From Diplonema japonicum (taxonomy: Eukaryota > Protista > Euglenozoa: Diplonemea), in contig OZ025704.1 of assembly GCA_964019335.1 (NCBI GenBank), positions 310,001 through 374,000 on the forward strand: a stretch of 64,000 bases of DNA, written 5' to 3'. Shown here in pieces: positions 14,981 to 38,219 of this stretch (the first letter of the stretch is position 1; the number at the start of each line of letters is the position of its first letter). The notes beneath the pieces were generated by a model. The model was given only the letters and a program-made list of their open reading frames with translations, was not told the origin of the DNA and did not search any database. The position numbers and the translations under genes are program-made.

Positions 14981-17900
14981 ATGAGCGGCGAGACTGACTA
15001 CGTGCAACGTATAGGGGAGTATGTGGCGCAGCTGAAGAACGGCAACCATGATGAACGAATGAAAACGAAGAGAGCGGTGGGGACCCTCATGCGGCAAGCG
15101 CTGGTAGAGCTAACGCTGGACAAGCTTCAGGAGATTGAAAGATGCATCAACTTTGCGATCTACGACTGTTTTGTAGATGGGGTGCAGGTGGCGGGGCTGC
15201 TACTTATAGACGAGCTGGTGGACATCGACTACATGGAAGGGGCACTGAAGACAACAAGGTTTGCAAACTACCTTCGCGGTGCTTTGCCCACCGAGCACCC
15301 AGCCCAAGCGGAGCTGGTGGCAACAACACTTGGGAAGATAGCCATGGAGGGCGGCATCCTCGCCTCGGAGGTCATCGAGGCGGAGCTCCGCCGTTGTGTC
15401 GAGTGGCTTGCCGTCGTCACCTCTATCACCGACAGCGGGAACAGACGGTACGGTGCCATCTTCGTCATCAATGAGCTCACCATCCGTGCACCGCACATCA
15501 TTGCTACCCGTTTGGAGGTTATTCTTGCTCACATTTCTAATGGAATGAAAGACATACGCCATCGTGCACAGCAGACCTGCTCCGTCATGCTCGGCTCCCT
15601 CCTCAAGCTCCTCAGCGACCGGTCTCTCAGAACGCGAGACATGTACTTCGGACGCCTTTTCGAAGACGCCTGCGAGCTCATTGACTCCTCTCGTTCCCAG
15701 GTGATGACCTTCACTCAAACAAGCAAGACCACCACCGTGCAGCTCTCCCACCAAGAGGTATCCGAAGCATCCTTCCGAGGCGGGTGCCTCATGCTTCGCG
15801 AGCTGTACGCCGTGCCCCCTTCCAGAAAGCACCCCATCTCCACCCTGCTTCTGGGGAAGTTCTCGTTCATCCTCGATACCGTACTGGAAGACCTGCCCAA
15901 GTCGAAGGGCTCCCTCGGCAACGTGCTCGAAGCGATGACACGCCTGCTGACTGTGATGGCGAAGTTCCACTCCGAAGGCTTCGGCCAGAAGTATCTCGGC
16001 AAAGCTGTGGACGTTTTCTTCTTGTTGTGGAAAACGAACCCGAAGAACGCGACGAAAGCATCTCTCTTGAAGATGATTGGCAACATGTTCAAGTCCATCG
16101 GCGCAGCTGAGCCGGTGAAGCTGGACCCCCAGAAGGCAAGCTCCATCACAAGCATCCTGCGCACGGAGATAGCGTCAAAGATAGGGTGCAGTGCTGCTGC
16201 TGTTCTGTGCGTCGCAGACCTGGCTAGGTCACTACCTGCTTCGGAATATGAACAAGACGCCCTGCAGCTCATCACACTTGGCTTGGAGAACATGGGTGTC
16301 ACAGCAGAAGTATGCGAAGCAGTGTCCCAGACGGGGATCGTGCTCACTGGTGTGAAGGACGAGCTCCACAAAAGGATGCTGTACACTATACGGATGATCT
16401 TGGCACCAAAGGAAATTGCACCGCTACCAGCAAAAGGCAAGAAAGTGGTGCAGCCCAGGCGGTACACCGAGAAAGATGTGAAGCTGGCGATCATGATGCT
16501 GAGCAACGTTGCAGCTGTGGCCCCAGAGCGTGTGATGATGAACAAGCTTTGGAACAGCGTGGTACCGTACCTAACACACGAGAGCCTAGGGCTGCGGATG
16601 GCCGCCATCAAGACAACAGGGGAGCTGCTCACGGTGTCGCTTCCCGGCCTCGGAAACGTCAGGAGCCCCATCGCAAGCGAGGTACTCGAAAAGATGCTTG
16701 CGGTCGCCGCTGCTGACATAGACTCAAACGTCAGAATGGCAGCGCTAAAGATGCTGCCGCCGCAGCTAGATGACTACCTTTGCCGTCCAACTATTATCAA
16801 GATGCTGGTCACAGCGGCTTATGATATGACCGAACCCACTCTACGCTTCACAGCACTGAGCGTGCTTGGTCGGCTGTCCACAAAACAACCAGGCATGATC
16901 TTGCCCCCACTGCGAAAGCTCCTTATCAGCGTGCTAAACGAGCTGAGTCACCCACGCGACAACATAGCGCATCAGCAATCCTCTGAAGTCCTCGGCCACA
17001 TCATCGCCTCGGCACCCAAGCTGGCGCACATGTACGCTGTGGCCATCCGCGATGCACTTCTCCCAAAGCTAACGTCCACCACAGCTTCACTGAAAACCGC
17101 CGTGATGTGCACGTTGAACACACTAGCGTCGGTAGGGGGCAAGGATATGATGAGCGTGGATGAGGTGATGATAGTGGTTATGAAAACGTTGGAAGAGGGG
17201 AAGCCAAGCCTGCAGAGGAGGTTGGCTTGCTTGCAGTGTCTCGCCAGTCTGATGCGGGCGGTCGACTGGGAAGTGCATCCTTACGAGAGGTTCCCTGGCC
17301 TGCTGTCGCTGCTGCTGCGTATTTTGCAGCTACCGCAACCGAACCCGACTGCGGAGGACGAGATCAGGGGGGGCGTGCTGAAGTGCTTGGGTGTGGCTGG
17401 TGCCTACGAGCCGTACAGGCTGCGGTACCAGGCATCAAGGTCGAAGATAAGGTTTGACAAGAGGAGCATGCAGGTGCTGTCGTCGCTTGCACCGGGCAGG
17501 GGCGTAGTAGGGGAGACAGACTTGTCACCGCTGATCCCTAGCTGCGGAGGTGAGCAGCTAGCATCGCACCTGTCACAGTACAACCCCAACCTGAGTATCA
17601 GGGTGCTGCTGAAAGTCGTGGACGACAGCTCGCTGTCCTCTTCCAACCACAAGATGGCTGTAGGGGCCATTGTCATGGTCGTGCATCGTCTGGATCCGAA
17701 GGAGTACCCCATGTACCTGGAAAAGATCTACAACGCCATCCTCTCATCTATGCAAGACACAGACGACCCTTCCTTGTTGTCCTTCATCATCCAACAAGTA
17801 CGCATCCTCTCTGAGATCGTAGGTCTCCACAGCAGGCCTTTCTTAGAAGACATCATCAACGCCGTTTCGCGTTTGTGCAGCACAGCGATGAAGCTCGAAT

Positions 17901-20900
17901 ACGAGCTACTGATCCAGGCACTGTCCCTTGTCATCGACCTCAGGATTCTATGCAGAGAGAGCTTCCTGCCGCACGTGAAGAAGGTGGTACCTTTGATCGG
18001 GATGGCACTGACGCAGAGAAGGGTTGTGAGCGTCTCGAAGGCGCTGCTGGCCATGGAGGTTATGGGATCGTTCTTGGAAGGGTTCCTCACAATATTGATC
18101 CCTCTGGTGCTGAAGTGCATTGGAGAGGAACAGCTAAAGTTGATTCACCATGCTGGGAAGGCGAGCCCTGCGACTCCCACGCACAACACGGAGAGAAAGC
18201 GCTCATCAGGTGCCTCTTCGGCGAGTGCTCGAGGCGGCATTGCGGTGGTGCAGCCGAGCGACAGCGAAGCTAAGGAGCGGCTCAACCTATTCAAGGTGGC
18301 ATCTCGAGCGCTTCACACCATCCACGCCTTGTCGTTCAAGGTTAGCTTGCGGGAATTCTCTGCGAAGATTCTGCACGCCCTCCTCCGAATTCTGACCACC
18401 GACCCCACCGAGCGGCAACGGCTTCACATCACACCGAAGTCATTTTCCCGGACTGCCTCCAATGAAGAGGCGCCCAAACTGCACCGCAGCAGGGTGCACT
18501 CCCTTGACAGCAACTCCCGTGACTCCCCCGACACCAAGATGGAGACCCTTTCGCTGATCCACCAGCTGGAGATTGAAGCGGTCCACGTACTTTGCGGTGT
18601 TGTGCCAAATATGCAACCGGAGGCCAAAGCCATTGAAAACACGCTGATACGCGTGGTGAGGACGAAGAATCTCCACACAGACACCTTCTGCCAGATTGTG
18701 ATTAACCACGGGACACCCCTGGAGAGGCCGGCGGAGCCCATCCACAAGAAGGTCCTCAGCACCATGACAGGCGATACGAGGGAGCTGGTCTGCAACCCGC
18801 GTGCCCTGAGCGGCGTCGTTGATGTGAGCAGCCAGACCACACCAGGGGAGTGGATCGAGTGGCTACGGGTGTTGAGCATCGAGCTGGTCAGGGAGAGCCC
18901 GTCACCTGCTTTGCGTGCATGTGCGAACCTTGCGCAGGTGAATTTGTCGGTAGCAAAGCAGCTGTTCAATGCTGCCTTCGTTTCGTGTTATCTGTATCTC
19001 CCACAGCCGCAGAAGGGCCATCTTCTGCAGGCAATCATTCTTGCGATCCAATCCCCCACTATTCCCCCCGATGTACTGCAGCCACTTTTGAGCTTGGCAG
19101 AGTTCATGGAGCATATGGAGGTCAGCGAGGAGCCCACTGCAAAGGCCAAAGCCTCAGTGATGTCCCCAACCTCGTTTCAGCGTGTGGAAAGCTGTCAGAT
19201 GGCAGTCTCAGAAGTGTTTAGTATGCCGTGTAGCGAAATGGAGGGAGAGACTCTCCCGCGGTCGGAGGTGCTGCAAGGCACCCCCCAAGGCCTTTTCGAG
19301 ACCACGAGAGCTGATGTATTCAGACCGCCACCCGCTGCCCCACAGAGCAAACCGGTGAGGAAGGCATACGAAGCTGTTCACGTAACACCACCTTTGCCTT
19401 TACCCAGCGAAATGGACTTGGACATGCTTGCAGAGAAGGCAGAAAATTGCCAAATGTACGCGAAAGCCCTGCACTACAGAGAGCTCATATTCATCGATCA
19501 CTTGAAGCGGGAGGTAGGTGGGATGTTCGGGCAGTACGTGGACGGCTACGTGGTACCCTTCACGCCCATTCAAAGCATGCTGGAGCAAGGCCTTGTTGAA
19601 CGCACGTGGAAGGGCTGGGTGGGGCATGTTGTCAAAATCGTGAGGTTGCACCAGCACCTTCGGAACCATCACTCTGCCCATGGAATCCTGTCCTTTGCGT
19701 TGGCAAACTTCGACAGAGTTGTGCTCTCCGATGGGCTGTATATACCAAAGGTAGAAGCCTCTGTGTACGAGGAGTTACATCAGTGGGACAGGGCAAAGGA
19801 AGAGTGGCTCCTTGTCCTGGAAAGGCTAGACGCTGAGCGTGCACAAAACGCTTTGCAGCAGACACTTGACATCACGCCCAACGGTGTGAGGAATGGGTCG
19901 TCGCCACGTATCTCGTCTTCCAGATCGTACGAGATGAAAGGCTTCAGCAGCACAAACGAACTGTGGTCCAGCGGGACCCCTTCGAACTCCATCACGAGCT
20001 CAGCGACGCCGAGTCTCTCGCAAATCGCAGCAACGTACAAATCTAAGTATGTTCACACACACCTTTCCACCTTTTCTGCAGCAAAGTTGACTGTGATCGT
20101 TCCCGAGTCATCCAGGGCCTCATCAAGGCGTGCAGGAGCCTTGGTGAGTGGTCCGAGGTTCTCCGTTTGGCGGAGCAGCTTCCCCATGACCACTACCACG
20201 TGGACACCTTCGATGAGGTCTCACGCGCCGCATGGATGCTGCAGGTAAGACGAAAAAAAGAGAAGAAAAAAAGAAAAAACACGCACCCCGCAGGAGTGGG
20301 ACGTCTTGTCGAAAACCACTGCCAAGATGCACCCTGAAAACGTCCAAAAACACGTATGGCATGATCCTCAAGGTGGCATCACACTACAGATACACGAAGC
20401 GGTCCTTGCTATCCACAAGGACGCCTTGCCTGAAGCCACTGCCTCCATTCTAACAGCACGGAAGTGCATCCAACCCGACATCGGCGCCCTCGCCTCGGAG
20501 TCGTACTCGCGTGCGTATCCCCTTATTGTTAAGCTGCAGGTTCTCGCTGAACTTGAAGAAGTGATTGAGTGGAAGCAGAGGGGTGGCATCGAAGCGCTTG
20601 AGCCAGACCAGCTGGAGGGCTTGCTGGGCATGTGGAAGGCTCGTCTCTATGCTATTGAACGACGCGCCAGGTACTGGGAAGAGAACCTGGCCATCCGCAG
20701 GATCTTGGTATGTCGATTCCCTACTAGAAGTCTTTCAACCACCTACAGGTCCCTCCCCAGCAGCAGCTAGACTGCTGGCTGAAGTTCGTCTCGATTGCAC
20801 GGAAAGCGAACAAGCCAGACCTTGCACGAAGCACGTTGAAGGAACTACTTGAGATCAGCGCCGAAGAAAGTATCAGGCTGAAGGTGACCTCTGTGGACCC

Positions 20901-23813
20901 TCTCCAGAAGGTATGGCCGCTATGCACACCACAAGCAACCAATAGGACTCACCTCATCCATACCTTGTGTGCGCGGCGTGCGAGTATTTATGGCACAAAG
21001 AAGAGAAGGAGATGGCCCCTGGGTTATTGTTTGACTACCTGGACAAGCTGAGTGCTCTGCAGAGCACTGAATTCGACAGCGTGAAAGGGAAGTACTACAG
21101 GAAGCTCGGGGAATGGTACCAAGAACTGCACCCTGACTCTTATTGGCTGCCGCCGCAGCGCGAGGTGGTCATGCGGTACCTGCGCAAAGCCACGCACTAC
21201 GACCCAGACTCGTGGAAGGCATGGCACCGCTGGGCGCTGATGAACCATCGAGTAATGCGGCGGTCCATGATAAGGGACCACCGTATCGTACCTTTTGTGC
21301 TGCAGGCCGCGCAAGGCTTCACGAGGGTAATCCAGCTGGGCACAAGCAGCTCCATCCAAGACCTGCTGCGCCTCCTAGGGCTGTGGTTCGCACATGGGCA
21401 TATCAAGCAGGTGGAGGTGGGGATGCGCAGGGTGTTCGAGTCCATCGCGACGAACAACTGGCTTCTCGTTATCCCGCAAATAGTAGCCCGTTTGCACCAC
21501 TCGAACAAGGCAATCAGAAGCTTGCTGCAGCAGCTGCTCGTCACACTAGGAAAGGAACACGGACAGGCTGTTGTGTACCCATTGATATGCGTCTTGTGCA
21601 GCGAGGATCCAAAAAGGGCGCAGGCAGGCGCAGACGTGCTGGATAAGATCTCTACATACGACCCAACGCTTGTGGCCGAGGGGCGGCTGGTGGCAACAAG
21701 CCTGGCAAAGGTCGCCCTCATCCTTGCAGAACAGTGGAGCTACGGCATCGACGAGGCACGATGGCTGTGCTTCAATGAAAAGGACGTGGGCGGCGCGATA
21801 AAGACCTTCCACGGGCTGCACTACTTGATGGACGCGAAGCCCGTTTCAGAGCATGAGAAGATGTTCCATAAGCAATTCTCGGTGCAGCTATCCAAGGCGC
21901 ATGCCTATATGCAGGCAGCAGAGAGGTACGTCGAGATGACAGACACCGAAAAGGCTATGGAAAGCTTCAAGAAGTCCCTTGACCAGGCACTGCTGATATA
22001 CAGCGAGGTGTACAAGGACATCGACAAGAAGCTGTCGAAGATGCCCTCGCTGGATCTGGCCTTTGCGAACCCGGACCTTTGTAAGTCGAAGAACCTTTCT
22101 ATCGCTGTGCCGGGCACCTACAGGCCCACCGAGCAGGTCGTCACCATCAAGTCGTTCAACCCGAAATGCTACATCATCCCCTCAAAGCAGCGTCCAAGGA
22201 AGATCTCTATCAACGGCAGCGACGGGCAGGAGTATATCTTCCTCTTGAAAGGGCGGGAAGACCTCAGGCAGGACGAACGTGTGATGCAGCTATTCACGCT
22301 TATCAACCAGTTGCTCAACGAAGACAGGACAACTGCAAAACTCCTGCTCTCCATCGAGCTATACCCCGTGATCCCTCTGGCGTCATCTGCAGGGCTCATC
22401 GGCTGGCTCTGCAACGCGGAGACGCTGTACTCCATTGTGAAGGAGTACAGGCGGTCGCACAGGATGAGCATCACCCTCGAGAAGGGCCTTGTCCCGGACA
22501 TGGTGGAGCCAGAGGGCTACGACAAGCTCACGCTGTATCAGAAGGTCGACGTGTTCGAGCACATCTTGGAAAAGACAAACGGCGACGATCTTTCGCGCAT
22601 GTTGTGGCTCAAATCGCGGAGCTCCGAAGTGTGGCTGTCGAATAGAACAACGTACACAAGGTCACTGGCAGTGATGTCGATGGTGGGGTTCGTGATGGGG
22701 CTCGGCGACAGGCACCCGTCAAACCTCATGCTGGACATCGACACCAGGAAGGTCATTCACATTGACTTCGGCGACTGCTTCGAGGTTGCTTCCAGGAGGG
22801 CAAAGTTCCCAGAGCAGGTGCCCTTCCGTCTCACACGTCTCCTCATCAAGGCCATGGACCTAGCAGGTGTGGAAGGCTCCTTCAGGAAGACCTCCGAGGA
22901 TGTTATGAGAGTTCTCCGCAAGCACAAGGACAGCCTGATGTCGATACTGTCTTCCTTCCTGCACGACCCGCTCATCAACTGGCGTCTCATCGACCCGGGT
23001 AAGCTGCGCGACGTAGCTCCTGACGACAACCACCCCGCGTGGGAGCCGTACAACGATCTCCTGAACAACGAAGAGTCCTACTCGGCGAACTTAGGCCCGT
23101 CGATGGATATGGAGCTGAGACACAGAAGCATGCGTGAGCAGGCTGTGCGGTCGGTGATTTCAAGGCGGACCACAGAAGTGCAGAACCAGTGTCAGCAGGT
23201 GGTCACACGGCAGGCAGTTGACGCGCTGAACAGGATACGACGGAAGCTGGACGGGATCGCGTTCAAGATGAAAATGGACATCATGGAGATAGAGGGGCAG
23301 CAGTTGTACACCTTCGACTACCATGACCCACTATTCGTGGGCGAGACGGCTGGGGTGGTCAGCGAGGCTGGCATCTGTGGGGAGTGCGAGGTAGAGCCCT
23401 CTGTCATGAAGTGCAACGAGTGCAACGACACCTTCTGCGGGCAGTGCTGCGAGACAGTCCACCAGAAGCGTCGGAATCTTCACCACAATTGCATCCAGAT
23501 CAACGCAAGGCCGGTGGCAGACTTCGACTGGCGCAGTATGGACCTCTCGCATCCCTTGGCTCCCGAGGCAGAGGCTGCCCTTGAGCGCATTGTAGTCCGG
23601 ATACAAGCGATCGTCCGTGGGCATTTGGTGCGCAAGACACGGCCTCAGATCGGCCTGTCACCTACCCTCACCCCTTCTGAGCCTCCACCAGGCCCAGACG
23701 CCACGGGTCCCCAGCCTATCGACCCTGCCGACCAAGTCAAACGGCTCATCCATGAGGCCACCGCACACGAGAACCTTGCTGTCGCATATGCAGGTTGGTG
23801 TGCCTGGTGGTAA
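14981..23813 (+). CDS. TOR: TOR-family PIKK kinase, 5 exons (14981-20046, 20082-20244, 20294-20707, 20749-20910, 20946-23813), ~2890 aa; HEAT-FAT-FRB-kinase-(B-box, IQ)-FATC
   Basis: TOR-like motifs: WIEWLRVLSIELVRESPSPALRAC..LFNAAFVSC, YAKALHYRE, ESYSRAY, SKQRPRK, FLLKGREDLRQDERVMQLF, GLGDRHPSN, IHIDFGDCFE, VPFRLTR and terminal ATAHENLAVAYAGWCAWW. Removing four GT-AG introns restores one continuous frame (8673 nt) with TOR-like FAT sequence in each small exon. Confidence 0.96.
20047..20945 (+). other. Four tiny spliceosomal introns in TOR: 20047-20081 (35 nt), 20245-20293 (49), 20708-20748 (41), 20911-20945 (35)
   Basis: Donors GTATGT, GTAAGA, GTATGT, GTATGG; acceptors GCAG, GCAG, ACAG, ATAG. 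Phases are compatible and the spliced peptides (LGEWSEV, AAWMLQEW, CWLKFVSIARK, HPYLVCA) match TOR FAT segments. Confidence 0.88.
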
Positions 23814-24034
23814 GGCAATGCAACAATAAAAAAAAAAGGAAAAAAAGAAAGCAAAAGTGTCGGTCTTCGCCTCGTCTTTTCATTTTTCTTTTTTTTTTTT
23901 TTTTGCCATAGCCTCTGTTTCTTTTTTTTGTTTTTTCTAGTTATATTTCCCCACCCACCCCCCCACCCCGTTTGCATTTAAAAAAAAAAAAAAACCAGAA
24001 AAAACCCTACACAAAAAAAAAAAAAAAAAAAGAA

Positions 24035-24940
24035 ATGTCAGGAGTGTCTGCAGGTATCTTGGGAGGTCTGGCGGCGATGACGGCGAGCACGCTGACACAC
24101 CCGGTGGACTCCTTGAAGGTGAGGATGTTCTTGCACGGGGAGGGCAAGGCCGGGAGAGGCGCGGGCATGGGGATCGTGAAGACTATCTACAAAACAGAAG
24201 GGATCAAGCAGGGATTCTACAGGGGCGTGACCGCCACATGGCTGAGACAAGCACTCTTCAGCACATCAAGGTTCGGAGTGAACGACCTGCTCCAGGGCGC
24301 CATGGGCAAGGGGAAGGGCAAGGACATCAACGTCGTCAAGAAGGTGGTTTCAAGCGCTGCTGCTGGCGCAACCGCTGCATGCTTCTCCTGCCCCGCTGAC
24401 CTTGTCCTAGTAAGGATGCAAGCCGACGGTAAGCTCCCAGTGGAACAAAGAAGAGGCTACCGCAACGTCTTCCACGGTATCAAGAGCATTGCTCAGACCG
24501 AAGGTGTCTCCCAGCTCTACAGGGGACTGAGGTCCTTGGTGATGAGGGGCTGCTTCGTCACAGCTGGACAGTTTACCACTTACGACGTCGCTAAGCGGAC
24601 CCTCCTCACAAGAATGAAGTTCAAGGATGGTACCAAAACCCATCTTATTGCTTCTACCATGGCCGGGTCTGTCTCCACTCTCATTGTAAACCCGATGGAT
24701 GTGATTAAGTCACGCATGATGCAATCGCAGTCCATCCCGAAGAACTCAGCCACTATTACTCCCACTCTCATGACTTACACCTCAGATTTGGACTGTGTTG
24801 TAAAGACTTACAAGTACGAAGGCATCAGAGGGTTTTACAAGGGTCTTATCCCTTGCTTCATGAGGCAATGCCCCCAGGTTATCTTCATGTGGGTAATTTT
24901 CGAGCAGTACAAAACTCTGTGGGCCAGAGTCACTGTGTAG
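24035..24940 (+). CDS. DIC: Mitochondrial carrier, dicarboxylate carrier (SLC25A10/DIC)-like, 301 aa
   Basis: Three carrier signatures PVDSLKVR, PADLVLVRMQAD and PMDVIKSR. GKLPVEQRRGY, LRQ...TSRF and RGCFVTAGQFTTYD are typical of the DIC/OGC subfamily and closer to DIC. Confidence 0.9.
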   Translation: MSGVSAGILGGLAAMTASTLTHPVDSLKVRMFLHGEGKAGRGAGMGIVKTIYKTEGIKQGFYRGVTATWLRQALFSTSRFGVNDLLQGAMGKGKGKDINVVKKVVSSAAAGATAACFSCPADLVLVRMQADGKLPVEQRRGYRNVFHGIKSIAQTEGVSQLYRGLRSLVMRGCFVTAGQFTTYDVAKRTLLTRMKFKDGTKTHLIASTMAGSVSTLIVNPMDVIKSRMMQSQSIPKNSATITPTLMTYTSDLDCVVKTYKYEGIRGFYKGLIPCFMRQCPQVIFMWVIFEQYKTLWARVTV

Positions 24941-29186: not shown

Positions 29187-29415
29187 TTTTTTTTTTCTTC
29201 CTCCTTGCTTCTATCTTTTTTTTTTAAACAACCTTTTTTAGCCCCCCCCCCTTCCATCCTCTTTTTTTTCTCATCCCCTCTTTCTTTCCCCCCCCCCCCC
29301 CTACCCAACAAAAAAATATTTAAAAAAGGATTTTTTTTAGGATTAATTAACCAAAAAAAAAAGGAAGAAAAAAAAAAAAGAAAAAAATGCAAAAACCTGG
29401 TTGTTCTACAAAACA
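24941..29415. repeat. Low-complexity intergenic DNA with dense poly-A/T and poly-C/G homopolymer runs (same character at 132-7400 and in other spacers)
   Basis: Many runs of 10 to more than 40 identical bases (e.g. T at 26300-26352). All ORF-track entries here are K/F-rich by-products of those runs. Confidence 0.9.
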
Positions 29416-32400
29416 ATGGAAGTAAGCGAAATATGGAGTGAGTATCAGAACAAAAGGGTGAGGGTGTTGTCGGTGGGGACCCGTCCGGGGCAGTTCAAGA
29501 GCATAGGCCGCGCCATCGGTTGCGCTGAAGAAGGGGACCGCATTGAGGTCGCCGGCGGGAAATATATCGAATCAATAGTCGTCTCTAAGCAAGTTGAACT
29601 CGTAGGCTGCGACGGCGAAACCCCTGAAATAGGCTATCGAGGCACAGTGGTTGCCTTCATAGGCAATGTAACACCAATACTGGTAGGGTTCGACATTTCC
29701 CAACATGACAGGTCTCGCGACCACCCTGTTATAACTGTGTCAGATGGGTCTCCTCGAATCGTCGATTGCAAATTCCCTTCAATCCTAGTGAGCGGCACGT
29801 CGACACCTGTACTTGTCAATAACACAATCTCCCACGCCATACAAGGTTCAGGAGTGCGTGTTAAAGGAAAATCAGGTGGTGTGTTCAAACGAAATCGTAT
29901 CCACTCCCACGAGGAGTACTGCGTCGAGATCGACACTGTAGGAAGCGTCACCTTCGAGGACAACAGAATCTGGTCGCCGGAGCCGGTTGAGGCAAAACCG
30001 CACCTCCGTGCTGTGCAGAAGGAACGCGGGAAGGGCGTCGTGATTATCTCCGCGAGAAAAGCCGGCTCCGCGTGCAAACCAATCTTCCGTGGGAATTATA
30101 TATCCGATGCTGGCGAGATGTGCGTTCTTCACTCCGCGCCGTTTTGTCTCGGCGCCCCCGCATCACGTTCCACAGTGTGGATCGCCAATGACAGTGGTGG
30201 AACCTTTGAAAGCAATGATCTTATCGGCGGTGTGACTGCCATTAGGATCTCTCCCGGAGCCGCCCCGCTCATCAGCGACAACACGATCTCCAAGCAGGAT
30301 CGGTACGGTGTTTTGATCGAGGCGGACTGTACCGCTGCCGTCGTCGAGAAGAACCGTTTCGTGGACTGTTCAGTGTCGGCGATTCACCTAGCAGGCTCCA
30401 TACGCGTCTTTCAGAATTTCATAGGTGGGTCGCTTACTGGGAACGGGATTTCCATTGGAAGCGAGGCCGCACCTTGCATCGAGCAGAATGTCATTGACGG
30501 TGTTGCGAAGGTTGGCATCAAGGTACACTCTCTTGGGTCCGGGTTCGTCACGAAGAATGAGGTGAAGCGTTGCGAAGGACCGTGCATCTTGTTCGAGGGC
30601 GGGGCGACGCCTGTCATCGAGGCGAACATCATCACCGACGGCAGGATGCAAGGCATCGTTGCTGTCAACAGCGCCGCTGGTGTTATCAGCAGGAACGAAG
30701 TCATCGGTGCCGCCGCCGCTGGCATCGCGGTCCTCAAAGGATCCGACCCCTTTGTTGACGGTAACAGGGTCAGCTCTTGTGTGGAGGGCATACTCGTCTC
30801 TGCAGATGCGAAGGGCGGATTCAAGGAAAACATCATTGAGGACTGCGGCACGGCCGTCATTGTGACACACTCATCTGCACCTATCTTCGTGAAGAACAAG
30901 GTCCTGACCAGCGACGGGAATGGGTTCTGCATCAAAGAACAGGGCAGAGGGGTTTATAAGGAAAACACTGTCGAGAACTGCAAGTTGACCGGAATGGTGG
31001 TGGCAAGCATGGCTGACCCAGAGGTGGGGGACAACATCTTCCTTGGAAACGGTGAGTACGGCATCGAAGCGCAGACGAATTGCCTGGGCATATTCGTACG
31101 AAATAAGTTAAACAGCAACACCATTGCAAACGTGCACGTGGCGACGGGGGCAGACCCAACCTTCCGTGGCAACACGATCTCATCGACGTCTGCAGGGGAC
31201 GGGGTCCGCATCGACGAGGGAGGTCTGGGCCACTTCGAGAAGAACAGAATCATCGACGTCAGCAACGGCGTGGTGATCCGCCATCTTCACACAGCGCCTG
31301 TTCTACTCCGGAACATCATCACGGGTTGCAGGAGGCATGGGATATCAATCAACGAGGAGGCGGCAGGCACCATCACACGCAACAACGTATCGGGTTCCCA
31401 CGAATCAGGCATCGTGGTGGCGAGTGGCGCAACGCCCCTCATCGCCGAGAACCAAATCCACGAAAAAGTCCACTCTATCGTTATGACAGGCAAAGGCACA
31501 AGCCCCGTGGTCCGAGGGAACAGTATATCAGGATGCGGTGGGCCTGCGATCGTAATCAGAAAGCAAGCCAACCCGCAAGTGACACGGAACAGCCTTGTAG
31601 GCAATCTTGCAGACGGGGTGCTCGCCGAAGACGGGGCGCAAGGTGTCATCGATGACAACGAGCTTCGAGGAAACGCTTGCGGGGTGTCCATCGCGACAGA
31701 CGCCGCACCGGTACTCGAACGCAATTCCATCACAGGCTGCACCATAGCGGGGGTTGAAATCCGAAGCGGCGGGGCTGGGATGGTACGGAACAACACGATC
31801 TCCGAGAACGCAACGGGCGTGTCATCAGTGGGGCACAGCGTGACCACAATCTTCGAGGCTAATACAATGGAATCGAACACATACGCAGTGAGATGCAGCC
31901 GCCCGCAAGGGATCCAAGGAAAGCAAGGCGAGGTCATCCTCAGAGACAACACGATCACCACGTCTGCCGTAGTCAACGTCCTCATCGAGAACCACGGGCG
32001 CATCACATTGGAGTCCAACGATATCTCGTCAGCGCCTGTGGGCGTTCTGTGCAAAGCTAGAGGGCACGGAGTTCTGAGGAAGAACACCATTCACACCCAT
32101 GGTGAGGTGAACCTCCGGGTGCTGACCGACGCAAACCCGACCGTGGAAGAAAATGTAATTGATAGATCCAAGATTGGCATAGAGGTGACAGACCACGGTA
32201 GGGGTACCTTCATGGGCAACGTCCTGCGTGGAAATGACTTGCAGATGTACGTGCTTCGAAAAGGCAACCCGACCGTGAAGAACTGTGAGATGAGCGGGTC
32301 CACAGGAAGCGGGCTCGTGATCCGTCAGGAGGGGTGTGGGACGTACCTTGAGAACAATCTTAACGGAAATGCGTTGTCGGGGATGGAAATCGAGATCGAA

Positions 32401-35400
32401 TCGAACCCCACCGTGCGGGGCAACACTTTCAACGACAACGCGATGCACGGCATCTTCATCCACAAGAACGGTCTTGGCATCATACAAGGTAACACCATCA
32501 CGGGAAACGGCAAATCCGGTGTTTACATCTGCTCTGGTGCCCGTCCCACACTCTCCGGCAACACCATCCAAGCCAACGCCTTCGGCATAAAACTCGAAAA
32601 GAACGGTTATGGATACATTACAGATAACACTATCCATGGGAATAAAGAAGCCGGAATCGAGCTTGAAGAGGGCGGTGATCCTTTCGTAGGCGAGAATGAC
32701 ATTTTCCATGAATTAGTTGGGATCGTGTCGAAGCACGCAGCAAGGGCGCAGATCCAGGGCAATAAGATTCGCGATTGTCATGTTGGTGTTGAAACCTCTG
32801 CCGAAGCGTGTCCCGATGTGCGGGAGAACACGTTCACAAAGAACCAGGTGGCGTGCAAGGTGTTTAAAAAGGGCGGCGGCACCTTCACAGCAAACAATTT
32901 TGTGGGGAACGTGGTGTCCATGGAGGTGCAGTCGGACGGTGCCCCCAGCGTGCTGCGAAATATATTTGACGGAACTAACGAGCAATGCATCGGGATCTCC
33001 ATTCAGGGCGCTGGGGACTACCGCACAAACACCTTCACAAGGCTCCAGCACGGCATCTATGCGTCATCCACCACCCCGACACCTGCTGTTGTGAACGATA
33101 ATAAATTCCGTGGGAATATAGTCGGCATCACAGTGACAACAGGGTGCACCATTAACATTGTCAACAACACCTTCACGAGCAACGAGGTCGCCGGCTTTGT
33201 CAGCAGAGACGATGGGAACCCCCTCTGCCACAGCAACACCTTCAACAAGGAAATGATCGCTTGCCTGGTCGAGCTCAGCAGGGGCGACTTCACACAAAAC
33301 CACTACGACGACAACGAGCAGGGCGCTGTTATCAAAGGCAAAGGCTGCACGCCATCCTTTAAAGGGTGCAGGTTCCTGAACAACGACCGAGGCTTTGTCG
33401 CCGAAGATCACTCGTCGCCGGCGGTAGAGCTGTGCTACTTCGACAGCAACGAGCGGTGTGGTGTGTCCATCGTGTCGTACGCACTTCCGCAGGTCACAAG
33501 GTGTTTTTTCTGCAACCACACGGGGGCTGCCGTGGAGGTGTCACAAGGCGCAGGCGGCGAGCTTGTCGAAAATGTGATGCTCCGCAACGACGTGGGGCTG
33601 AGCATCTTGTCGCACGCCACTACAAGGGCATACAGGAACCACTTCGTACAGTCAGCAACAGCGGCTGTCAGCAGCACGCACTATGGAAAAGGTAGTGTCG
33701 ATGAAAACATGTTCGAGGACAATGGGACAGACGTCGAGGTGGGTGTATCAGAGACCGTTTTCACGGGGAACTATCTCCCTTCGCAGCGCGCTGTGACTGC
33801 GAAAGACAGCACGCGTGCCATGTTCATCTCCAACGTCATCACCGGGAAGGTGGTGATCAACAGCAATGCGGACCCCATCTTTAAGGACAACATCTTCACG
33901 AACTTAGGTGTGCTGGTTGAGGTTGACGGGCTCGGCTGCTTCGACGGAAACACGTTCTTCAAGCCAACGGACAAGCTCGAAGCGATCCTGGAGCTGAGGG
34001 GCGGAAGGCCGCGTGCTGTCCACAACACGTTCATGCAATGCGCCAGAGCTGTGCTGACAATGGCGGGGGGACAAGGCCATTTCAGCAAAAACACGTTCAT
34101 AGGGGGAAAGGTTGGCATTGAGGTGCGCGAGGGAGGCGACCCTTATGTTGGTGCGGGAAACGTTCTCGAAGGCCAAGAACGTGGTGTCGTGGTGACGGGG
34201 CAGGGCGCCAAGGGCAACTTCGAGCGCTGTGAGATAAGCGCGGCGACCATATGCGGTGTACTTGTCGAGAAGGACGCAACCCCGACATTCCTGGCGGCTG
34301 ATGTGTTTGACTGCAAAACTGGGATCCACATTAGCAAGAGGGCAAAAGGCCTGTACAAGGACTGCAATGTCTTCGACAACTGCCTCAACGGGGTCCATGT
34401 GGATGCTGAATGTGCACCACACTTGGTCCACTGCAAGCTCTCCTCGGCACTGGAGATAGGCGCCCTGCACAGGGACATGGGTGCCAACGGGACTTACGAC
34501 AACAACAAGGTGAAACATCTCTTCTCCCCGGTCATGCAGAAGCGGGCATGCCCACGTGACCGCTGGGACACACGCAAGAACAACACGCCATTAATCAAGA
34601 AGGAAATTGCAAGCTTCGACAAGAGAATAGCGAATCTCATCTCTTGCGCGGGGGAGTGGTGCAAGGTGTTGGCGTATCTGTTTGTCAAGTGGGGCATACC
34701 GAAGGTGGTTTCTGGAACGCCACAGACCCCCCACACCCCCCTGTCCGTGAACTTAGCCGCGAGACCCAGCTTCAAGCTCCCCTCGTCTGATACTAAAAAG
34801 AAAAGTGTTAATCTCATGGAGCGCAACCCGCCGACCCAACGTGCCGCCTCAGTGCCCCGCAGACGGAGCATGCCCAACATGCGCCGAGGAAGCAGCTCAG
34901 ATCTCAAAAAGCCTGCAGATAGTAAACCGGAGTTGAAGAAGTCAAACAGTCTGATGGTTCCTCATGCACCTGAAGGCACTCCTATTACCAAGAGCCTGAC
35001 AAGGCGGGAGAGTTTCGCAAAGCGAGGCACCAGAACGCGAAGCGAAAGCCTCCGAAGGAGGTCGTCGCTTGCTAAATTGTCGAAACGAAACTCAGGGATC
35101 ACGCGGTCCACGTCTATTTCAAAGCCTTCTATTAGTAGATCTGGCTCGCTGACTAGGTCCTCTTCCATCACAAGGGCATCTTCAATAACAAGGACGAACT
35201 CCGGAATGCGGAGGTCTCAGACTTTTACTAAAAAGAGGAAAAGCAAGCCAGCACCTGTTCTGTATCCTGGGGCAGAGGCACTCGCCTCACTTGGGGAGCC
35301 GACCTTCTCTGTTAACACTTTGCTGTCCCCGAAGAACATGCTTGAGTCTCCGGACAAAGGAATGGACATACTGCCACGCAGGTCCTCTGGCCACTTGCAC

Positions 35401-38219
35401 AGGAAGCTCACGATGTACGCTGACCTCATGACGCCACCTTCGGAATATGTAGGGGCAAAGAAGAAGCAAAAGAAAGAGGTACAGCAGCAACCGCCGTTTG
35501 AGTGGGGCAAGTCGGAGAACATCTTAGAAACATGCTTCAGCCCAACGCAGAGCGCAACGAGAAATTACCATGCAGAAAGACCAAGGTATGGAGAAAAGCA
35601 CACGCTTGTATTTATTCCAACAGACCGAAAACTGCGGTGAAAAAAGTTGTTCCCGCGAGGTTGGATTTGCGGCAGCTGGAAGACGGCCTCTCACCTCCGA
35701 GAACGCCGCAGTCAGGTTCGATGTTGCCTGTTATTGTTTCCCCAACTCAACTACAAGGACAGAGGCAAGGACAGACTCCGCAAGGCATTCTTATGTCGGC
35801 CATGACTTCCCCCTACGAGCTACCCTTCCAGACACCTGAGATGCGAGCGCCTGCGAACACACCTATCATGAGCAACATCAAACTGCCTATTGCCAATTAC
35901 TCAACGCAGCAGGCACCTGAACAGTCGGAAGATGGGTCAGCTGGGGACGAGAAGTTGGAATATCACGACCAGAAAGAGTACGACCAGCACATGATGTGCA
36001 TGCACGAAGACACACCGTCTGTGGGGGGCATGAGTGACTTCGAAGATCAACTCAACGACTTCACATTCGGAGAAAACGTTCCCAGAAAGGCTAAGTTGAC
36101 GCAACGCTGTGTCTCTCCACCTACTGCACCCTCCGACAGGGCTGACGCTCATAAACAAGTCCCTGTTCCTGTCAAAGCCAGCTTGGCAAATGGTAAGAAG
36201 TTTGTTCACGAAACTGAAGAGCAGACGTTGCAACAAGAAGAGGTGCGAATCGAGATTAATTATGAGCCCGAAGCTCAAATCGAGGATGAACTGCCTAAAG
36301 TGGAAAAAGAGCAACCGTGCGGCGTTCCTGAGCCACAGCCAGGTGTACCAGAACAGCCGTCACAACAGAAGATGCACAGTGTGCCCTCGCTGGAGGAGCA
36401 TTCCCAAGGCAGAACTCAACAGGAACACGAAGCACATGAGGTAAGTGAGGCACTGCCTAAGCAAAGTTCTTCCCCAAGGCGAGACTCCGAACCCAAAAAG
36501 CCGCTAACACAGTTGCCCTTGGAGCCGATCCAACACAAACGACAGAATCAGAATCCCAAACCGCAGAACACTCCCTTACAAGCTCAGCCTGAACAGCAGA
36601 TGAACCAGCCACAACAGAAACAGAGTGATTCTAAACAAAAGCATGTAGTGAGGAAACAGCCACAGGTGGAGGACCAGAAGGAGCAGTTTCCACAACAAGA
36701 GCAACTGCAGAAGGCTCCTGAACAGCTATCCGAACATCCTCCACAGACGCCACAGAAAGAGCAGAAACGGACACCTCCCAAGCATTCACAGGATCGTTCA
36801 CCTCGACACAGGCTGCGTTCGTCAGAAGAAAAGGCAAACCCCATAGCACAACAGCAGATTGTGAATCCAACTCAGGGCATACTAATGGACGAGAGACAGG
36901 TCGCGATGGGTGGAGCAGTGGAAGGTGTCGCTTCCGTGTCGCATGAGGTATCCGAAATCGAGTTGCGGGAATACGTTCCAGAAACGGAAGCAGGATTCCC
37001 AGCTACTACACCGCGAGAGATCACCTTAGGCAACGGGGTTGTCGCTGCCCCCGCGACCCCTTGTGGTCATGGCACGTTCGAGGTGCCCGAAGATGAGCTG
37101 TTCATTGTCTCGCCTGCTACAACGCAGAACGTGATGTCGCCACCGCCTGCGGCCATGTCGCAGACCCCCATCGTGTCACCTGAGAGCGACATGGATAGGG
37201 GGCTTGTTCCCACACCACTGCAGCTGCTGATGCACCAGCAGGGGGGACAGCCGGATGCGCTTCCAACTGCAATTACAGAGGCTGAGGGCAGAACACCTGT
37301 GTTTGAAGAGGAGGCACAACCACAACCACAACCACAACCACAACCTGCCAGGCAAATGTCGTTCAAGTCGCCGGAGGTGACACCAGCGACACCGGAGATG
37401 CCCGCAGAAGAGCCTGTGCCACAGCATGCAAAGGCGCTTGTGGATGTCCAGGAGTATGAAGGGGACGATACTATCGGGACGGTGTCGATCTCGCCGCTGA
37501 CGACACCCAACGTGGCACTGCTGCCGGGGGGGCTGAGGCTGGGGTCCCGGCGGAGCCTTTTGAGCGCGCAGTCTGTGCCGTTCACAGTGTCGGAGGCTAC
37601 GGCCTCGTTCCAAGGCTCGCCTTGTATGGACGTGAGTGACGACATGGAGCCACTGTCAGGGTTCCACATCGAACAGGTGGCAGAGGAGGGCGACATGTCC
37701 GACTGTGAGTGGTTGGATGATGAGGATAAGGTGACGAAACGTGTAGAAAAACAACACACACCCCCATCACCTCCAACAGCCGTTGTAGTGAGACCCAATG
37801 AGGGTGACACCCCGTGGATGGAACATTTGAACACCTTAGTGTCGCTGAAAAAACATAGTGGTGAGGATGACGCGGAGTGCTTGCTGCCAAGGCTGGGCCC
37901 ACCGGGGAGCCACCCTCATAGGAAAGCTGCTTCCAACCACCCTCTCGGCAGTAATAGCCACAACAAGATAAAGAGAAAGAGCTACAGCGAGACGCTTCCT
38001 ATAGACCCAGCATCCGTTCCTGCGCCTTCGGGGTTTCTCTCGAGGGAATGGGGCACTATGCCGGCGATTTCTTCCAGCCCTGATCCTGTCTTCCCGCCGC
38101 CCATTGCTCAGCCGAAGCCTATGCATCTTACTTTCACCCCACGTGTGCCGGGGCAATCCCGGCCTTGGTCGACTGCTACAACAATTTCCACTAGACGGCC
38201 ATACAGCGCGAAACACTGA
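29416..38219 (+). CDS. ~2921-aa right-handed parallel beta-helix (PbH1/CASH-type) repeat protein with a long disordered tail; exons 29416-35585 and 35624-38219
   Basis: About 1690 aa of alternating 'G(I/V).(V/I)....P....N.I' and 'G.G....N.I' repeats. Intron 35586-35623 (38 nt, GTATGG..CAACAG) joins the 2079-aa and 905-aa ORFs in frame. The tail is S/R-, Q/P- and E-rich. Confidence 0.85.

What the first reader, a model, noticed from the sequence alone, without database searches (positions are those of the whole stretch)
23376..23640. TOR kinase with a B-box zinc finger and an IQ (calmodulin-binding) motif inserted between the kinase domain and FATC
Seen: after the kinase C-lobe (...LNRIRRKLDG) and before the FATC (DQVKRLIHEAT...GWCAWW), the same frame reads CGECEVEPSVMKCNECNDTFCGQCCETVHQKRRNLHH, a CxxC..CxxC..CxxC..H..H B-box pattern (23376-23495). 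It then reads IQAIVRGHLVRK, a full IQxxxRGxxxRK consensus (23601-23636). Established: canonical TOR/mTOR has only a short linker here, and this region packs next to the active site. Trypanosomes have extra TOR paralogues, TOR3 carrying a PDZ domain, but I know of no TOR with a B-box plus IQ. Inference: this is a lineage-specific TOR paralogue that may be gated directly by calmodulin/centrin or Ca2+ and scaffolded through the B-box, i.e. a possible new TOR complex.
Basis: partly seen in the sequence, partly recalled or inferred. Interest (0 to 1): 0.9.

Follow-up and report, generated by a model that had tools for sequence, protein, structure and literature searches.

The report
Diplonemid TOR kinase with B-box and IQ insert
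A marine diplonemid protist has an extra, expressed copy of the growth-control kinase TOR that carries a small zinc-finger (B-box) and a calmodulin-type docking helix (IQ motif) next to its catalytic cleft; all sampled diplonemids keep this layout, and I found it in no other TOR and no paper.

Summary
Window 14981-23813 (+) is a six-exon TOR gene of 2878 codons. Its last exon reads, in one frame: kinase domain, helix k-alpha-10, a 158-residue insert, FATC. The insert holds a C-x2-C-x8-C-x2-C-x4-C-x2-C-x4-H-x7-H B-box (23376-23486) and IQAIVRGHLVRK (23601-23636).

- **Exonic:** spliced RNA-derived contigs from three studies remove five 35-49 nt GT..AG introns upstream but run unbroken through the insert.
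- **Conserved:** orthologues in Diplonema papillatum, Flectonema, Lacrimia, Artemidia and two unnamed assemblies keep every zinc ligand, the same spacing and Q-x3-RG-x3-R. They form a 100/100 clade.
- **Restricted:** a HMMER scan of 1.84 billion representative proteins found no other TOR with this insert.
- **Fold:** AlphaFold2 gives a confident B-box (best match COL2 B-box, Z 7.7, rmsd 0.9 Å) and a helix over the IQ motif. Pfam scores are borderline in this protein.
- **Context:** the genome holds seven TOR paralogues, and the same junction is variable among them.

Binding of calmodulin or another partner is untested inference. Orthology to kinetoplastid TOR1-4 could not be tested. I rate this a new variant of a known kind, undescribed in the papers I could search. 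The scan had not noted it before on other DNA.

The parts
14981..23813 (+). Whole TOR paralogue gene: six exons, 8637 coding nt = 2878 codons plus stop
   Evidence: ORFs and spliced contig X1. The exon lengths 5066+163+60+318+162+2868 are divisible by 3. Pfam finds mTOR_dom in exon 1 and FAT, FRB, kinase and FATC in exon 6.
14981..20046 (+). Exon 1: N-terminal HEAT region with the mTOR_dom and the first part of FAT
   Evidence: PF11865 mTOR_dom 84.7 bits. The donor at 20046/20047 is used in contig X1. Relatives of the N-terminal part are only diplonemid-like proteins and canonical TORs.
20047..20945 (+). Intron-rich stretch: introns 20047-20081 (35 nt), 20245-20293 (49 nt, A-rich), 20354-20389 (36 nt), 20708-20748 (41 nt) and 20911-20945 (35 nt), separated by four small FAT-domain exons
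   Evidence: GT..AG joints are seen in the RNA-derived contigs of X1, X2 and X3. The DNA contig X4 is collinear with the window. Sequence read.
20946..23813 (+). Last exon (955 codons plus stop): end of FAT, FRB, kinase, PRD, insert and FATC in one unspliced piece
   Evidence: X1 covers 20944-23820 with one piece, X2 covers 21652-23820 and X3 covers 23219-23600, all without joints. Of the 40 listed differences to a related strain, 36 are synonymous.
21702..22028 (+). FRB domain
   Evidence: PF08771, 55 bits in the own-genome scan and 50.2 bits in hmmscan.
22233..22985 (+). PI3/PI4-kinase catalytic domain, with the catalytic-loop motif GDRHPSN and the HIDFGD motif intact
   Evidence: PF00454 229.6 bits. 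Aligns to mTOR 2171-2435, E 1e-107. D588, R589, H590, N593, D607, F608 and G609 are invariant in A2.
23172..23252 (+). Helix k-alpha-10 (...QAVDALNRIRRKLDG), the last element of the PIKK regulatory domain before the insert
   Evidence: AlphaFold2 helix 743-769, pLDDT 70-82. R763, K767 and G770 are invariant across 26 TORs. Naming follows PMC7619004.
23307..23342 (+). Clade-specific conserved motif YTFDYHDPLFVG in the linker before the B-box; function unknown
   Evidence: Conserved as Y-x-F-D-x-[HY]-D-P-L-F-V-G in six of seven orthologues. AlphaFold2 gives pLDDT below 50 for it, both alone and in context.
23376..23486 (+). B-box (B-box1/ANCHR-like) zinc finger, C-x2-C-x8-C-x2-C-x4-C-x2-C-x4-H-x7-H
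   Evidence: All eight ligands and their spacing are identical in the seven orthologues. phmmer hits to true multi-B-box proteins reach E 2.4e-26. It is 46% identical (pairwise E 3e-13) to a Pfam-positive B-box protein of the same genome. AlphaFold2 pLDDT is 85-91, and the best structural match is the COL2 B-box, Z 7.7, rmsd 0.9 Å over 46 residues. Pfam ANCHR-like_BBOX scores only 20.4 bits here, below the cut-off of 27.
23562..23639 (+). Predicted 26-residue helix that carries the IQ motif IQAIVRGHLVRK (23601-23636)
   Evidence: Q127, R131, G132 and R136 are invariant in A1. [ILMV]Q-x3-RG-x3-R is present in all orthologues. The helix has pLDDT 84-87 alone and 57-75 in context. Pfam IQ scores 20.6 bits on the 170-residue piece (cut-off 20.3) and 18.2 bits on the 948-residue ORF translation (window:20967-23810).
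23721..23810 (+). FATC domain (...DQVKRLIHEATAHENLAVAYAGWCAWW), followed by the stop codon at 23811-23813
   Evidence: PF02260, 46-52 bits. Aligns to the C-terminal 40 residues of human mTOR, GRDFSHDDTLDVPTQV...CPFW (residues 1126-1165 of chain 3jbz_A).

Best explanation
Shown:
- This is a real, transcribed gene under purifying selection. It is a diplonemid-specific paralogue of the TOR kinase, with intact HEAT/mTOR_dom, FAT, FRB, catalytic residues and FATC.
- At the junction between helix k-alpha-10 (the end of the PIKK regulatory domain, PRD) and FATC it carries a 158-179-residue cassette: a conserved linker motif, a B-box1-type zinc finger, about 40 variable residues, an IQ helix, then a variable linker.
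- The cassette was already present in the common ancestor of Diplonemidae and Hemistasiidae.

Inferred:
- The cassette was probably captured from the free-standing B-box/IQ proteins that exist in protists, some with the same B-box-to-IQ spacing.
- It most likely acts as a flexibly tethered regulatory or docking appendage on the C-lobe, beside the substrate cleft.
- The IQ helix would bind an EF-hand protein (calmodulin, a calmodulin-like light chain or centrin). The B-box would bind a partner or mediate self-association.
- Kinase output or location would then become Ca2+- or partner-dependent. This is analogous to how PRD elements and the SMG1 insertion control other PIKKs.
For: - **Exonic:** the contigs splice out five introns yet run unbroken across the insert, in three studies. 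The DNA contig keeps the introns.
- **Selection:** 36 synonymous against 4 non-synonymous differences to a related strain; all 5 differences in or near the insert are synonymous.
- **Orthologues:** P0001-P0004, P0081 and P0082 have the same layout. They are named Diplonema papillatum, Artemidia, Flectonema and Lacrimia.
- **Invariant residues:** all zinc ligands and the IQ residues, with identical spacing.
- **Phylogeny:** 100/100 monophyly with a species-tree-like order.
- **B-box identity:**
- **Predicted structure:** a confident B-box and IQ helix joined by low-confidence linkers.
- **Possible source:** free-standing proteins with a B-box, about 45 residues and then an IQ motif (P0053, aligned over 99 residues), and proteins combining IQ with B-box and EF-hand or WW domains.
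- **Site:** the PRD is a known regulatory site beside the cleft, and SMG1 has a roughly 1200-residue PRD insertion that inhibits activity (PMC7619004). Ca2+/calmodulin already acts on mTOR signalling in trans (PMC9959742).
Against: - No binding data exist. IQ is a 12-residue motif with borderline Pfam scores (18.2-20.6 bits against a cut-off of 20.3), and the D. papillatum version (MQSVGRGWRARA) is degenerate.
- The B-box Pfam score is below the cut-off here (20.4 against 27) and reaches it only in Lacrimia (27.2).
- AlphaFold2 does not place the module against the kinase (pLDDT below 50 in the linkers), so closeness to the active site is topological, not modelled.
- The RNA status of runs X1-X3 is a guess in the records and is inferred only from intron removal. 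These runs come from about 1.5% divergent strains, not this strain.
Confidence: 0.55

Rival explanations
1. The cassette is a pure protein-protein or assembly module with no Ca2+ or calmodulin input. The B-box mediates self-association or recruits a paralogue-specific subunit or substrate. The basic 'IQ' helix is simply part of that interface, or a membrane- or kinase-docking helix.
For: The best structural neighbours include the PML B1-box, which forms multimers, and the TRIM and CONSTANS B-boxes, which are interaction domains. IQ scores are borderline. The conserved YxFDxxDPLFVG motif suggests further interfaces.
Against: The strict conservation of Q-x3-RG-x3-R, while neighbouring residues vary, is the signature of IQ motifs. 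The same B-box plus IQ pairing recurs in proteins that also carry strong IQ arrays or EF-hands.
Confidence: 0.3
2. The insert is an autoinhibitory extension of the PRD. Like the SMG1 insertion or the ATM k-alpha-9b pseudosubstrate, it occupies or shields the substrate cleft until it is released by phosphorylation, redox or zinc status, or a ligand.
For: It has the same topological position as known inhibitory PRD elements (PMC7619004). It is cysteine-rich, and it sits on flexible tethers long enough to reach the cleft.
Against: No model shows docking in the cleft, and no pseudosubstrate-like sequence was identified. This reading is compatible with, not exclusive of, the main explanation.
Confidence: 0.1
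3. Artefact or neutral filler: an unrecognised intron, an assembly error, or a functionless lineage-specific expansion segment.
For: PIKK linkers are often variable. In this genome the same junction ranges from about 8 to more than 190 residues among the paralogues.
Against: The insert is retained in spliced transcripts. It has invariant ligands across deep diplonemid divergence, synonymous-only differences and a confident predicted fold.
Confidence: 0.03

Closest known systems
Canonical TOR/mTOR (FRAP family of PIKKs; human mTOR, yeast Tor1/2)
   Same: N-terminal HEAT/mTOR_dom, FAT, FRB, PI3/PI4-kinase domain with catalytic residues, k-alpha-10 and FATC. The kinase domain is about 60% identical to TORs from all over the eukaryotes.
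   Different: The canonical proteins have about 14-17 residues between k-alpha-10 and FATC. This one has 158, containing a B-box and an IQ helix. It is also one of seven TOR paralogues in its genome.
Kinetoplastid extra TORs (TbTOR3/TOR-like 1 with a PDZ domain; TbTOR4 without FRB)
   Same: Sister-lineage precedent for expanded TOR families with accessory domains and non-canonical complexes (PMC5461346).
   Different: There is no PDZ hit and FRB is present. No kinetoplastid-length TOR shared the B-box/IQ region in the 1.84-billion-protein scan. Orthology was not tested because no kinetoplastid sequences could be fetched.
SMG1 insertion domain and other PRD elements of PIKKs (ATM k-alpha-9b, ATR PRD)
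   Same: A large lineage- or paralogue-specific insertion between the kinase domain and FATC that regulates access to the active site (PMC7619004).
   Different: The SMG1 insertion is about 1200 residues and has no B-box or IQ. Here the insertion lies after k-alpha-10, is about 160 residues, and is built from two recognisable modules.
B-box zinc fingers (PF00643 / PF22586; TRIM B-box1, PML B1, CONSTANS/COL, ZFYVE19/ANCHR)
   Same: The eight-ligand cross-brace pattern, a beta-hairpin plus helix fold, and structural matches of Z 6.0-7.7. The nearest sequence relatives are B-box proteins.
   Different: It is embedded inside a PIKK kinase domain region rather than in a TRIM/RBCC, CONSTANS-like or ANCHR context. 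It has no RING or long coiled coil beside it.
IQ motifs (PF00612) of myosins, ion channels and IQ/B-box/WW protist proteins
   Same: [ILMV]Q-x3-RG-x3-R on a predicted helix. The spacing to a preceding B-box is the same as in the free-standing protein P0053.
   Different: It is a single motif, the hydrophobic residue at position 14 is missing here, and its partner is unknown.

Membership tests
TOR (FRAP) subfamily of PIKK kinases | FAT + FRB + PI3/PI4-kinase + FATC in this order, with N-terminal HEAT repeats and the mTOR_dom | tested here: met
   Pfam: mTOR_dom 84.7, FAT 51.9 (last exon only), FRB_dom 50.2, PI3_PI4_kinase 229.6 and FATC 46.2 bits, all above the cut-offs. The best PDB relatives are mTOR and Tor2, E 1e-107.
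TOR (FRAP) subfamily of PIKK kinases | Catalytic-loop D-R-H-x-x-N and the D-F-G magnesium-binding motif are intact | tested here: met
   GLGDRHPSNLMLD and IHIDFGDCFE are present. D588, R589, H590, N593, D607, F608 and G609 are invariant in A2.
TOR (FRAP) subfamily of PIKK kinases | Assembles with Raptor/LST8 or Rictor-type partners and phosphorylates substrates | not testable with these tools
   Needs affinity purification and kinase assays.
B-box zinc finger (PF00643 / PF22586) | Eight Cys/His ligands with B-box spacing | tested here: met
   C-x2-C-x8-C-x2-C-x4-C-x2-C-x4-H-x7-H, identical in the seven orthologues.
B-box zinc finger (PF00643 / PF22586) | Score above the Pfam gathering threshold | tested here: inconclusive
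   Window protein: ANCHR-like_BBOX 20.4 (cut-off 27) and zf-B_box 15 (cut-off 24.1). Orthologues: P0082 27.2, which passes; P0004 25.9 and 23.2. phmmer from the insert reaches Pfam-positive B-box proteins at E 2.4e-26 to 1e-4.
B-box zinc finger (PF00643 / PF22586) | B-box fold (beta-hairpin plus helix, cross-brace) | tested here: met
   AlphaFold2 pLDDT 85-91, strands 61-63 and 68-70, helix 72-79. Structural matches: COL2 Z 7.7 at 0.9 Å over 46 residues, CONSTANS 6.6, PML B1 6.6, TRIM28 B1 6.0. RING domains score 4.7 or lower. The Foldseek E-values themselves are not significant.
B-box zinc finger (PF00643 / PF22586) | Binds two zinc ions | not testable with these tools
   Needs metal analysis of recombinant protein.
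IQ calmodulin-binding motif (PF00612) | Consensus [FILV]Q-x3-[RK]G-x3-[RK] on an alpha-helix | tested here: met
   IQAIVRGHLVRK. Q, R, G and R are invariant. Predicted helix 113-138 with pLDDT 84-87.
IQ calmodulin-binding motif (PF00612) | Score above the Pfam gathering threshold | tested here: inconclusive
   20.6 bits on the 170-residue piece (cut-off 20.3) but 18.2 bits on the 948-residue ORF translation (window:20967-23810). P0004 scores 19.0.
IQ calmodulin-binding motif (PF00612) | Binds calmodulin or a related EF-hand protein | not testable with these tools
   No multimer modelling or assay was available.
Kinetoplastid TOR3 (TOR-like 1) / TOR4 | A PDZ domain (TOR3), or no FRB (TOR4) (PMC5461346) | tested here: not met
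   No PDZ hit at E up to 1. FRB is present at 50.2 bits.
Kinetoplastid TOR3 (TOR-like 1) / TOR4 | Phylogenetic orthology | not tested
   No kinetoplastid TOR sequences were returned by the capped searches.

The most novel reading that the evidence does not exclude
Diplonemids, among the most diverse heterotrophic protists of the ocean, have a TOR complex whose catalytic subunit has a built-in Ca2+ input. A calmodulin-family protein would sit on the IQ helix at the PRD/FATC junction and, together with the zinc-bound B-box, open or close the substrate cleft or recruit substrates. That would be a cis-encoded version of the Ca2+/calmodulin control that animals impose on mTOR only in trans, and a fifth kind of TOR complex beyond TORC1/2 and the kinetoplastid TORC3/4.
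Probability: 0.25. Interest if true: 0.8.

Novelty: new variant of a known kind. Interest (0 to 1): 0.62.

Why it matters
- TOR's domain plan is among the most conserved in eukaryotes. Accessory domains inside the kinase/FATC unit are almost unknown, the kinetoplastid TOR3 PDZ being the textbook exception.
- Here a zinc finger and an IQ helix sit at the PIKK regulatory domain. That is the element controlling substrate access in mTOR, ATM, ATR and SMG1.
- The arrangement is conserved across a whole, ecologically important lineage.
- If the IQ helix binds calmodulin or centrin, it would show that nutrient/growth signalling and Ca2+ signalling can be fused in one polypeptide. It would also give a natural handle on how the k-alpha-10/FATC junction transmits regulation.
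- The question is testable, because Paradiplonema papillatum has the orthologue (KAJ9469159.1) and is genetically tractable.
- The seven-member TOR family in this genome, with a different insert at the same junction in several members, suggests diversification of TOR complexes by swapping PRD modules.

Tried and rejected
**Readings rejected**
- Intron or artefact reading: rejected by the spliced contigs.
- 'Documented across many TORs': rejected. In the scan of 1.84 billion representatives, only diplonemid-type proteins match across the whole C-terminus. Of the 120 best TORs, only four (all diplonemid) cover the insert.

**Searches that gave little or nothing**
- Sequence-only PDB search with the insert gave only non-significant hits: MID1 and PML B-boxes, HERC2 ZZ.
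- The ESM Atlas look-alike search gave nothing usable.
- The metagenome scan found no environmental TOR with the cassette, only IQ/WW/B-box giants (L017, L018) and unrelated B-box loci.
- AlphaFold2 of the whole last exon did not dock the insert or the YxFDxxDPLFVG motif onto the kinase, so I make no spatial claim from models.
- The search with the N-terminal exon returned no kinetoplastid TORs, so a TOR1-4 phylogeny was not possible.
- Literature searches found no description of this architecture. The D. papillatum genome paper does not mention TOR, rapamycin, calmodulin or B-box at all.

**Limits on what I could run**
Exons were searched separately by reference, and only exon lengths were summed.
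Full report
**1. The observation**

In one open frame it reads ...LNRIRRKLDGIAF..., then GICGECEVEPSVMKCNECNDTFCGQCCETVHQKRRNLHH, then ...RIVVRIQAIVRGHLVRKTRP..., then ...DQVKRLIHEATAHENLAVAYAGWCAWW*. The B-box begins at 23376 and the IQ motif is at 23601-23636.

Pfam on this frame gives PI3_PI4_kinase 229.6, FAT 51.9, FRB_dom 50.2 and FATC 46.2 bits. The upstream 1755-codon ORF gives mTOR_dom 84.7 bits. The kinase aligns to human mTOR 2171-2435 and the tail to the last 40 residues of human mTOR, GRDFSHDDTLDVPTQV...CPFW. The catalytic DRHPSN and HIDFGD motifs are intact.

From 'KLDG' at the end of helix k-alpha-10 to 'DQV' at the start of FATC there are 158 residues. The consensus of canonical TORs has KLxGxDF + 9 residues + LDVxxQV, and human mTOR has GRDFSHDDTLDVPTQV.

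A loose B-box pattern occurs once in the six-frame translation of the window and never in 50 shuffles. The bare IQ pattern is short enough to arise by chance (0.82 per shuffled window), so its weight comes from conservation.

**2. Gene structure and expression**

The gene is not one ORF. Between 20047 and 20945 the frame changes several times. I laid public contigs on 19800-24000.
- One 3986-nt contig of run X1 skips 20047-20081 (35 nt), 20245-20293 (49 nt), 20354-20389 (36 nt), 20708-20748 (41 nt) and 20911-20945 (35 nt). All are GT..AG.
- The same contig then lies on 20944-23820 in a single piece.
- X2 has the last joint and an unbroken 21652-23820 piece. X3 has the 41-nt joint and an unbroken 23219-23600 piece.
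- X4, the best DNA holder, is collinear with the genome, introns included.

So molecules that have lost the true introns keep the insert: it is exonic. The records only guess that X1-X3 are RNA; intron removal is the evidence.

The six exon lengths sum to 8637 nt, which is 2878 codons plus the stop. I summed lengths only.

X1-X3 differ from the window by about 1.5%. Of the 40 listed differences in the last exon, 36 are synonymous, including all five in or next to the insert.

**3. Relatives**

- A word-based search with the last 256 residues found one protein, P0001, with kinase, B-box and FATC.
- The HMMER scan of 1.84 billion representatives with window:23100-23810 found three proteins matching from k-alpha-10 to the C-terminus: P0002 (E 6e-51), P0003 and P0004. 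Every other hit matched only the B-box, only the IQ or only the FATC part. The only other TOR-length hit (P0029) had its best-scoring match in the FATC segment (query 201-237).
- A search with the C-terminal 612 residues of P0002 ranked 3915 TORs. Only P0002, P0081, P0082 and P0003 cover 100% of the query. The rest cover about 45%, which is the kinase.
- Cluster look-ups name them: Diplonema papillatum KAJ9469159.1 ('Target of rapamycin'), Artemidia motanka, Flectonema neradi and Lacrimia lanifica.
- P0001 and P0004 come from unnamed ENA assemblies. There the gene model is split in two: the N-terminal parts are P0197 and P0198, on the same contigs.

In the alignment of the C-termini, CGECE, C63, C66, D, FC71, C74, H79, RRN and H87 are invariant. 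So are Q127, R131, G132 and R136. The ligand spacing is identical in all orthologues, while the linkers vary in length and sequence. A further clade-specific motif, Y-x-F-D-x-[HY]-D-P-L-F-V-G, precedes the B-box.

A maximum-likelihood tree of the kinase domain puts the seven B-box TORs in one clade (100/100). Artemidia (Hemistasiidae) branches first, and the window sequence lies next to Flectonema and D. papillatum. The cassette therefore predates the split of the sampled diplonemid families.

**4. The organism**

Earlier notes of this scan call the genome a diplonemid, probably Diplonema japonicum. I did not verify the species. The following are consistent with it: the orthologue tree, same-strand gene arrays, and GT-AG introns of 35-49 nt, one with an A-rich tract. 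The published description of D. japonicum gives a median intron of 41 nt, 98% canonical, with A-rich tracts (PMC12621601).

**5. Is it a B-box?**

- Pfam is below threshold in this protein: ANCHR-like_BBOX 20.4 against 27, and zf-B_box 15 against 24.1. It reaches threshold in Lacrimia (27.2) and nearly so in P0004 (25.9 and 23.2).
- The phmmer hits to query residues 87-135 are true B-box proteins, for example P0005 with five B-boxes at 112 bits.
- The same genome encodes a tandem-B-box protein whose first box is 46% identical to the insert (pairwise E 3e-13) and scores 42 bits in Pfam.
- AlphaFold2 on the 195-residue tail gives pLDDT 85-91 for a beta-hairpin plus helix.
- Foldseek's top ten matches are almost all B-boxes, though with non-significant E-values. 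VIA-align gives COL2 B-box Z 7.7 (rmsd 0.9 Å over 46 residues), CONSTANS 6.6, PML B1 6.6 and TRIM28 B1 6.0. RING domains score 4.7 or lower.

I accept it as a B-box1/ANCHR-like zinc finger. Zinc binding itself is untested.

**6. Is it an IQ motif?**

The consensus is complete, lies on a predicted 26-residue helix (pLDDT 84-87 alone, 57-75 in context), and its four defining residues are invariant. Pfam is borderline: 20.6 bits on the 170-residue piece and 18.2 on the 948-residue ORF translation (window:20967-23810), against a cut-off of 20.3.

Supporting context comes from other proteins. The free-standing protein P0053 has B-boxes followed, at the same distance, by a strong IQ motif (30.3 bits). 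It aligns with the insert over 99 residues from the B-box to the IQ. Other hits combine IQ with B-box and EF-hands (P0014), or IQ arrays with WW and B-boxes (P0008; seawater contigs L017 and L018). This suggests the cassette was captured from such a family. No partner was tested.

**7. Where it sits**

By the PIKK nomenclature reviewed in PMC7619004, k-alpha-9b, a disordered loop and k-alpha-10 form the PIKK regulatory domain (PRD). FATC follows and folds back on the C-lobe. FRB, LBE/LST8 and k-alpha-9b wall the substrate cleft. PRD elements inhibit or gate ATM, ATR, mTOR and SMG1, and SMG1 has a roughly 1200-residue insertion there.

The diplonemid cassette lies exactly at the k-alpha-10/FATC junction. 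AlphaFold2 of the whole last exon (pTM 0.71) keeps the B-box and the helix as folded units, but gives pLDDT below 50 for the tethers. The module is therefore best described as flexibly attached. I make no claim of a docked position.

**8. Family context**

The genome has seven loci with FRB, kinase and FATC. Their k-alpha-10-to-FATC spacers are:
- about 8-16 residues in C69 and C5a, which is canonical
- 40 residues in C26
- 88 residues in C5b
- 158 residues in C112, a different cysteine-rich insert with no Pfam hit
- 158 residues in this gene
- more than 190 residues in C94

The junction is thus a hot spot for paralogue-specific modules. Kinetoplastids are known to have four TORs, TOR3 with a PDZ domain and TOR4 without FRB (PMC5461346). 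This gene has FRB and no PDZ.

**9. Interpretation and limits**

Shown: a real, expressed, conserved, diplonemid-specific TOR paralogue with a B-box plus IQ cassette in the PRD.

Inferred:
- The IQ helix binds a calmodulin-family protein.
- The B-box binds a partner or itself.
- The cassette makes activity, substrate choice or location of this TOR depend on Ca2+ or a partner.

Ca2+/calmodulin control of mTOR signalling in trans is known in animals (PMC9959742). Rival readings are given separately: a pure interaction module, or an autoinhibitory plug.

Not done:
- A phylogeny with kinetoplastid TOR1-4.
- Complex modelling.

I found no paper on this architecture. The sequences themselves are public.

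Noticed in passing
G000 contigs C5 (two loci), C26, C57, C69, C94, C112; loci L002-L007: The genome encodes seven TOR-type genes with FRB, kinase and FATC, more than the four known in kinetoplastids. The spacer between k-alpha-10 and FATC ranges from about 8 to more than 190 residues among them.
   Followed up: partly
L006:916-2922:+ (G000:C112): A second TOR paralogue has a different 158-residue cysteine-rich insert at the same junction (...SCCECEYD...CYQCKK...CCPTCAIDVCPDC...). It has no Pfam hit and may be another zinc module.
   Followed up: partly
window 23307-23342, and the PRD loop around 23090-23170: Two clade-specific conserved motifs of unknown role: Y-x-F-D-x-[HY]-D-P-L-F-V-G before the B-box, and DL-x-HRS-x-RE-x-x-VRS-x-x-SR in the PRD loop. 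AlphaFold2 gives the first one low confidence.
   Followed up: partly
window 20354-20389: A 36-nt in-frame GT..AG intron lies inside an apparently continuous ORF. It is visible only through the spliced contig. All five introns of the gene are 35-49 nt, and one (20245-20293) is A-rich.
   Followed up: yes
P0053, P0008, P0014; L017/L018 (seawater metagenome contigs); L010, L012, L014, L015 in G000: B-boxes of the same 'CGECE...VH.KGRR..H' type are common in this genome and in marine protist proteins. They are combined with IQ arrays, WW, EF-hands, calpain (L012) or TLDc (L015). P0053 has the same B-box-to-IQ spacing as the TOR insert.
   Followed up: partly
P0197+P0001 and P0198+P0004 (ENA contigs of 508,806 and 1,382,796 bases): In two public assemblies the orthologous TOR is annotated as two separate proteins, an N-terminal part and a C-terminal kinase part. 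This is probably a gene-model break at small introns.
   Followed up: no
window 29401-35640 (+): A 2079-codon ORF made almost entirely of right-handed beta-helix/NosD repeats (Beta_helix 453 bits, 14 stretches).
   Followed up: no
window 7401-62379: All 14 large ORFs lie on the + strand and are separated by AT-rich spacers (GC 34-40% against 51-57% in coding regions). A mitochondrial-carrier gene (23972-24940) starts only about 160 nt after the TOR stop. This is consistent with polycistronic transcription units.
   Followed up: no
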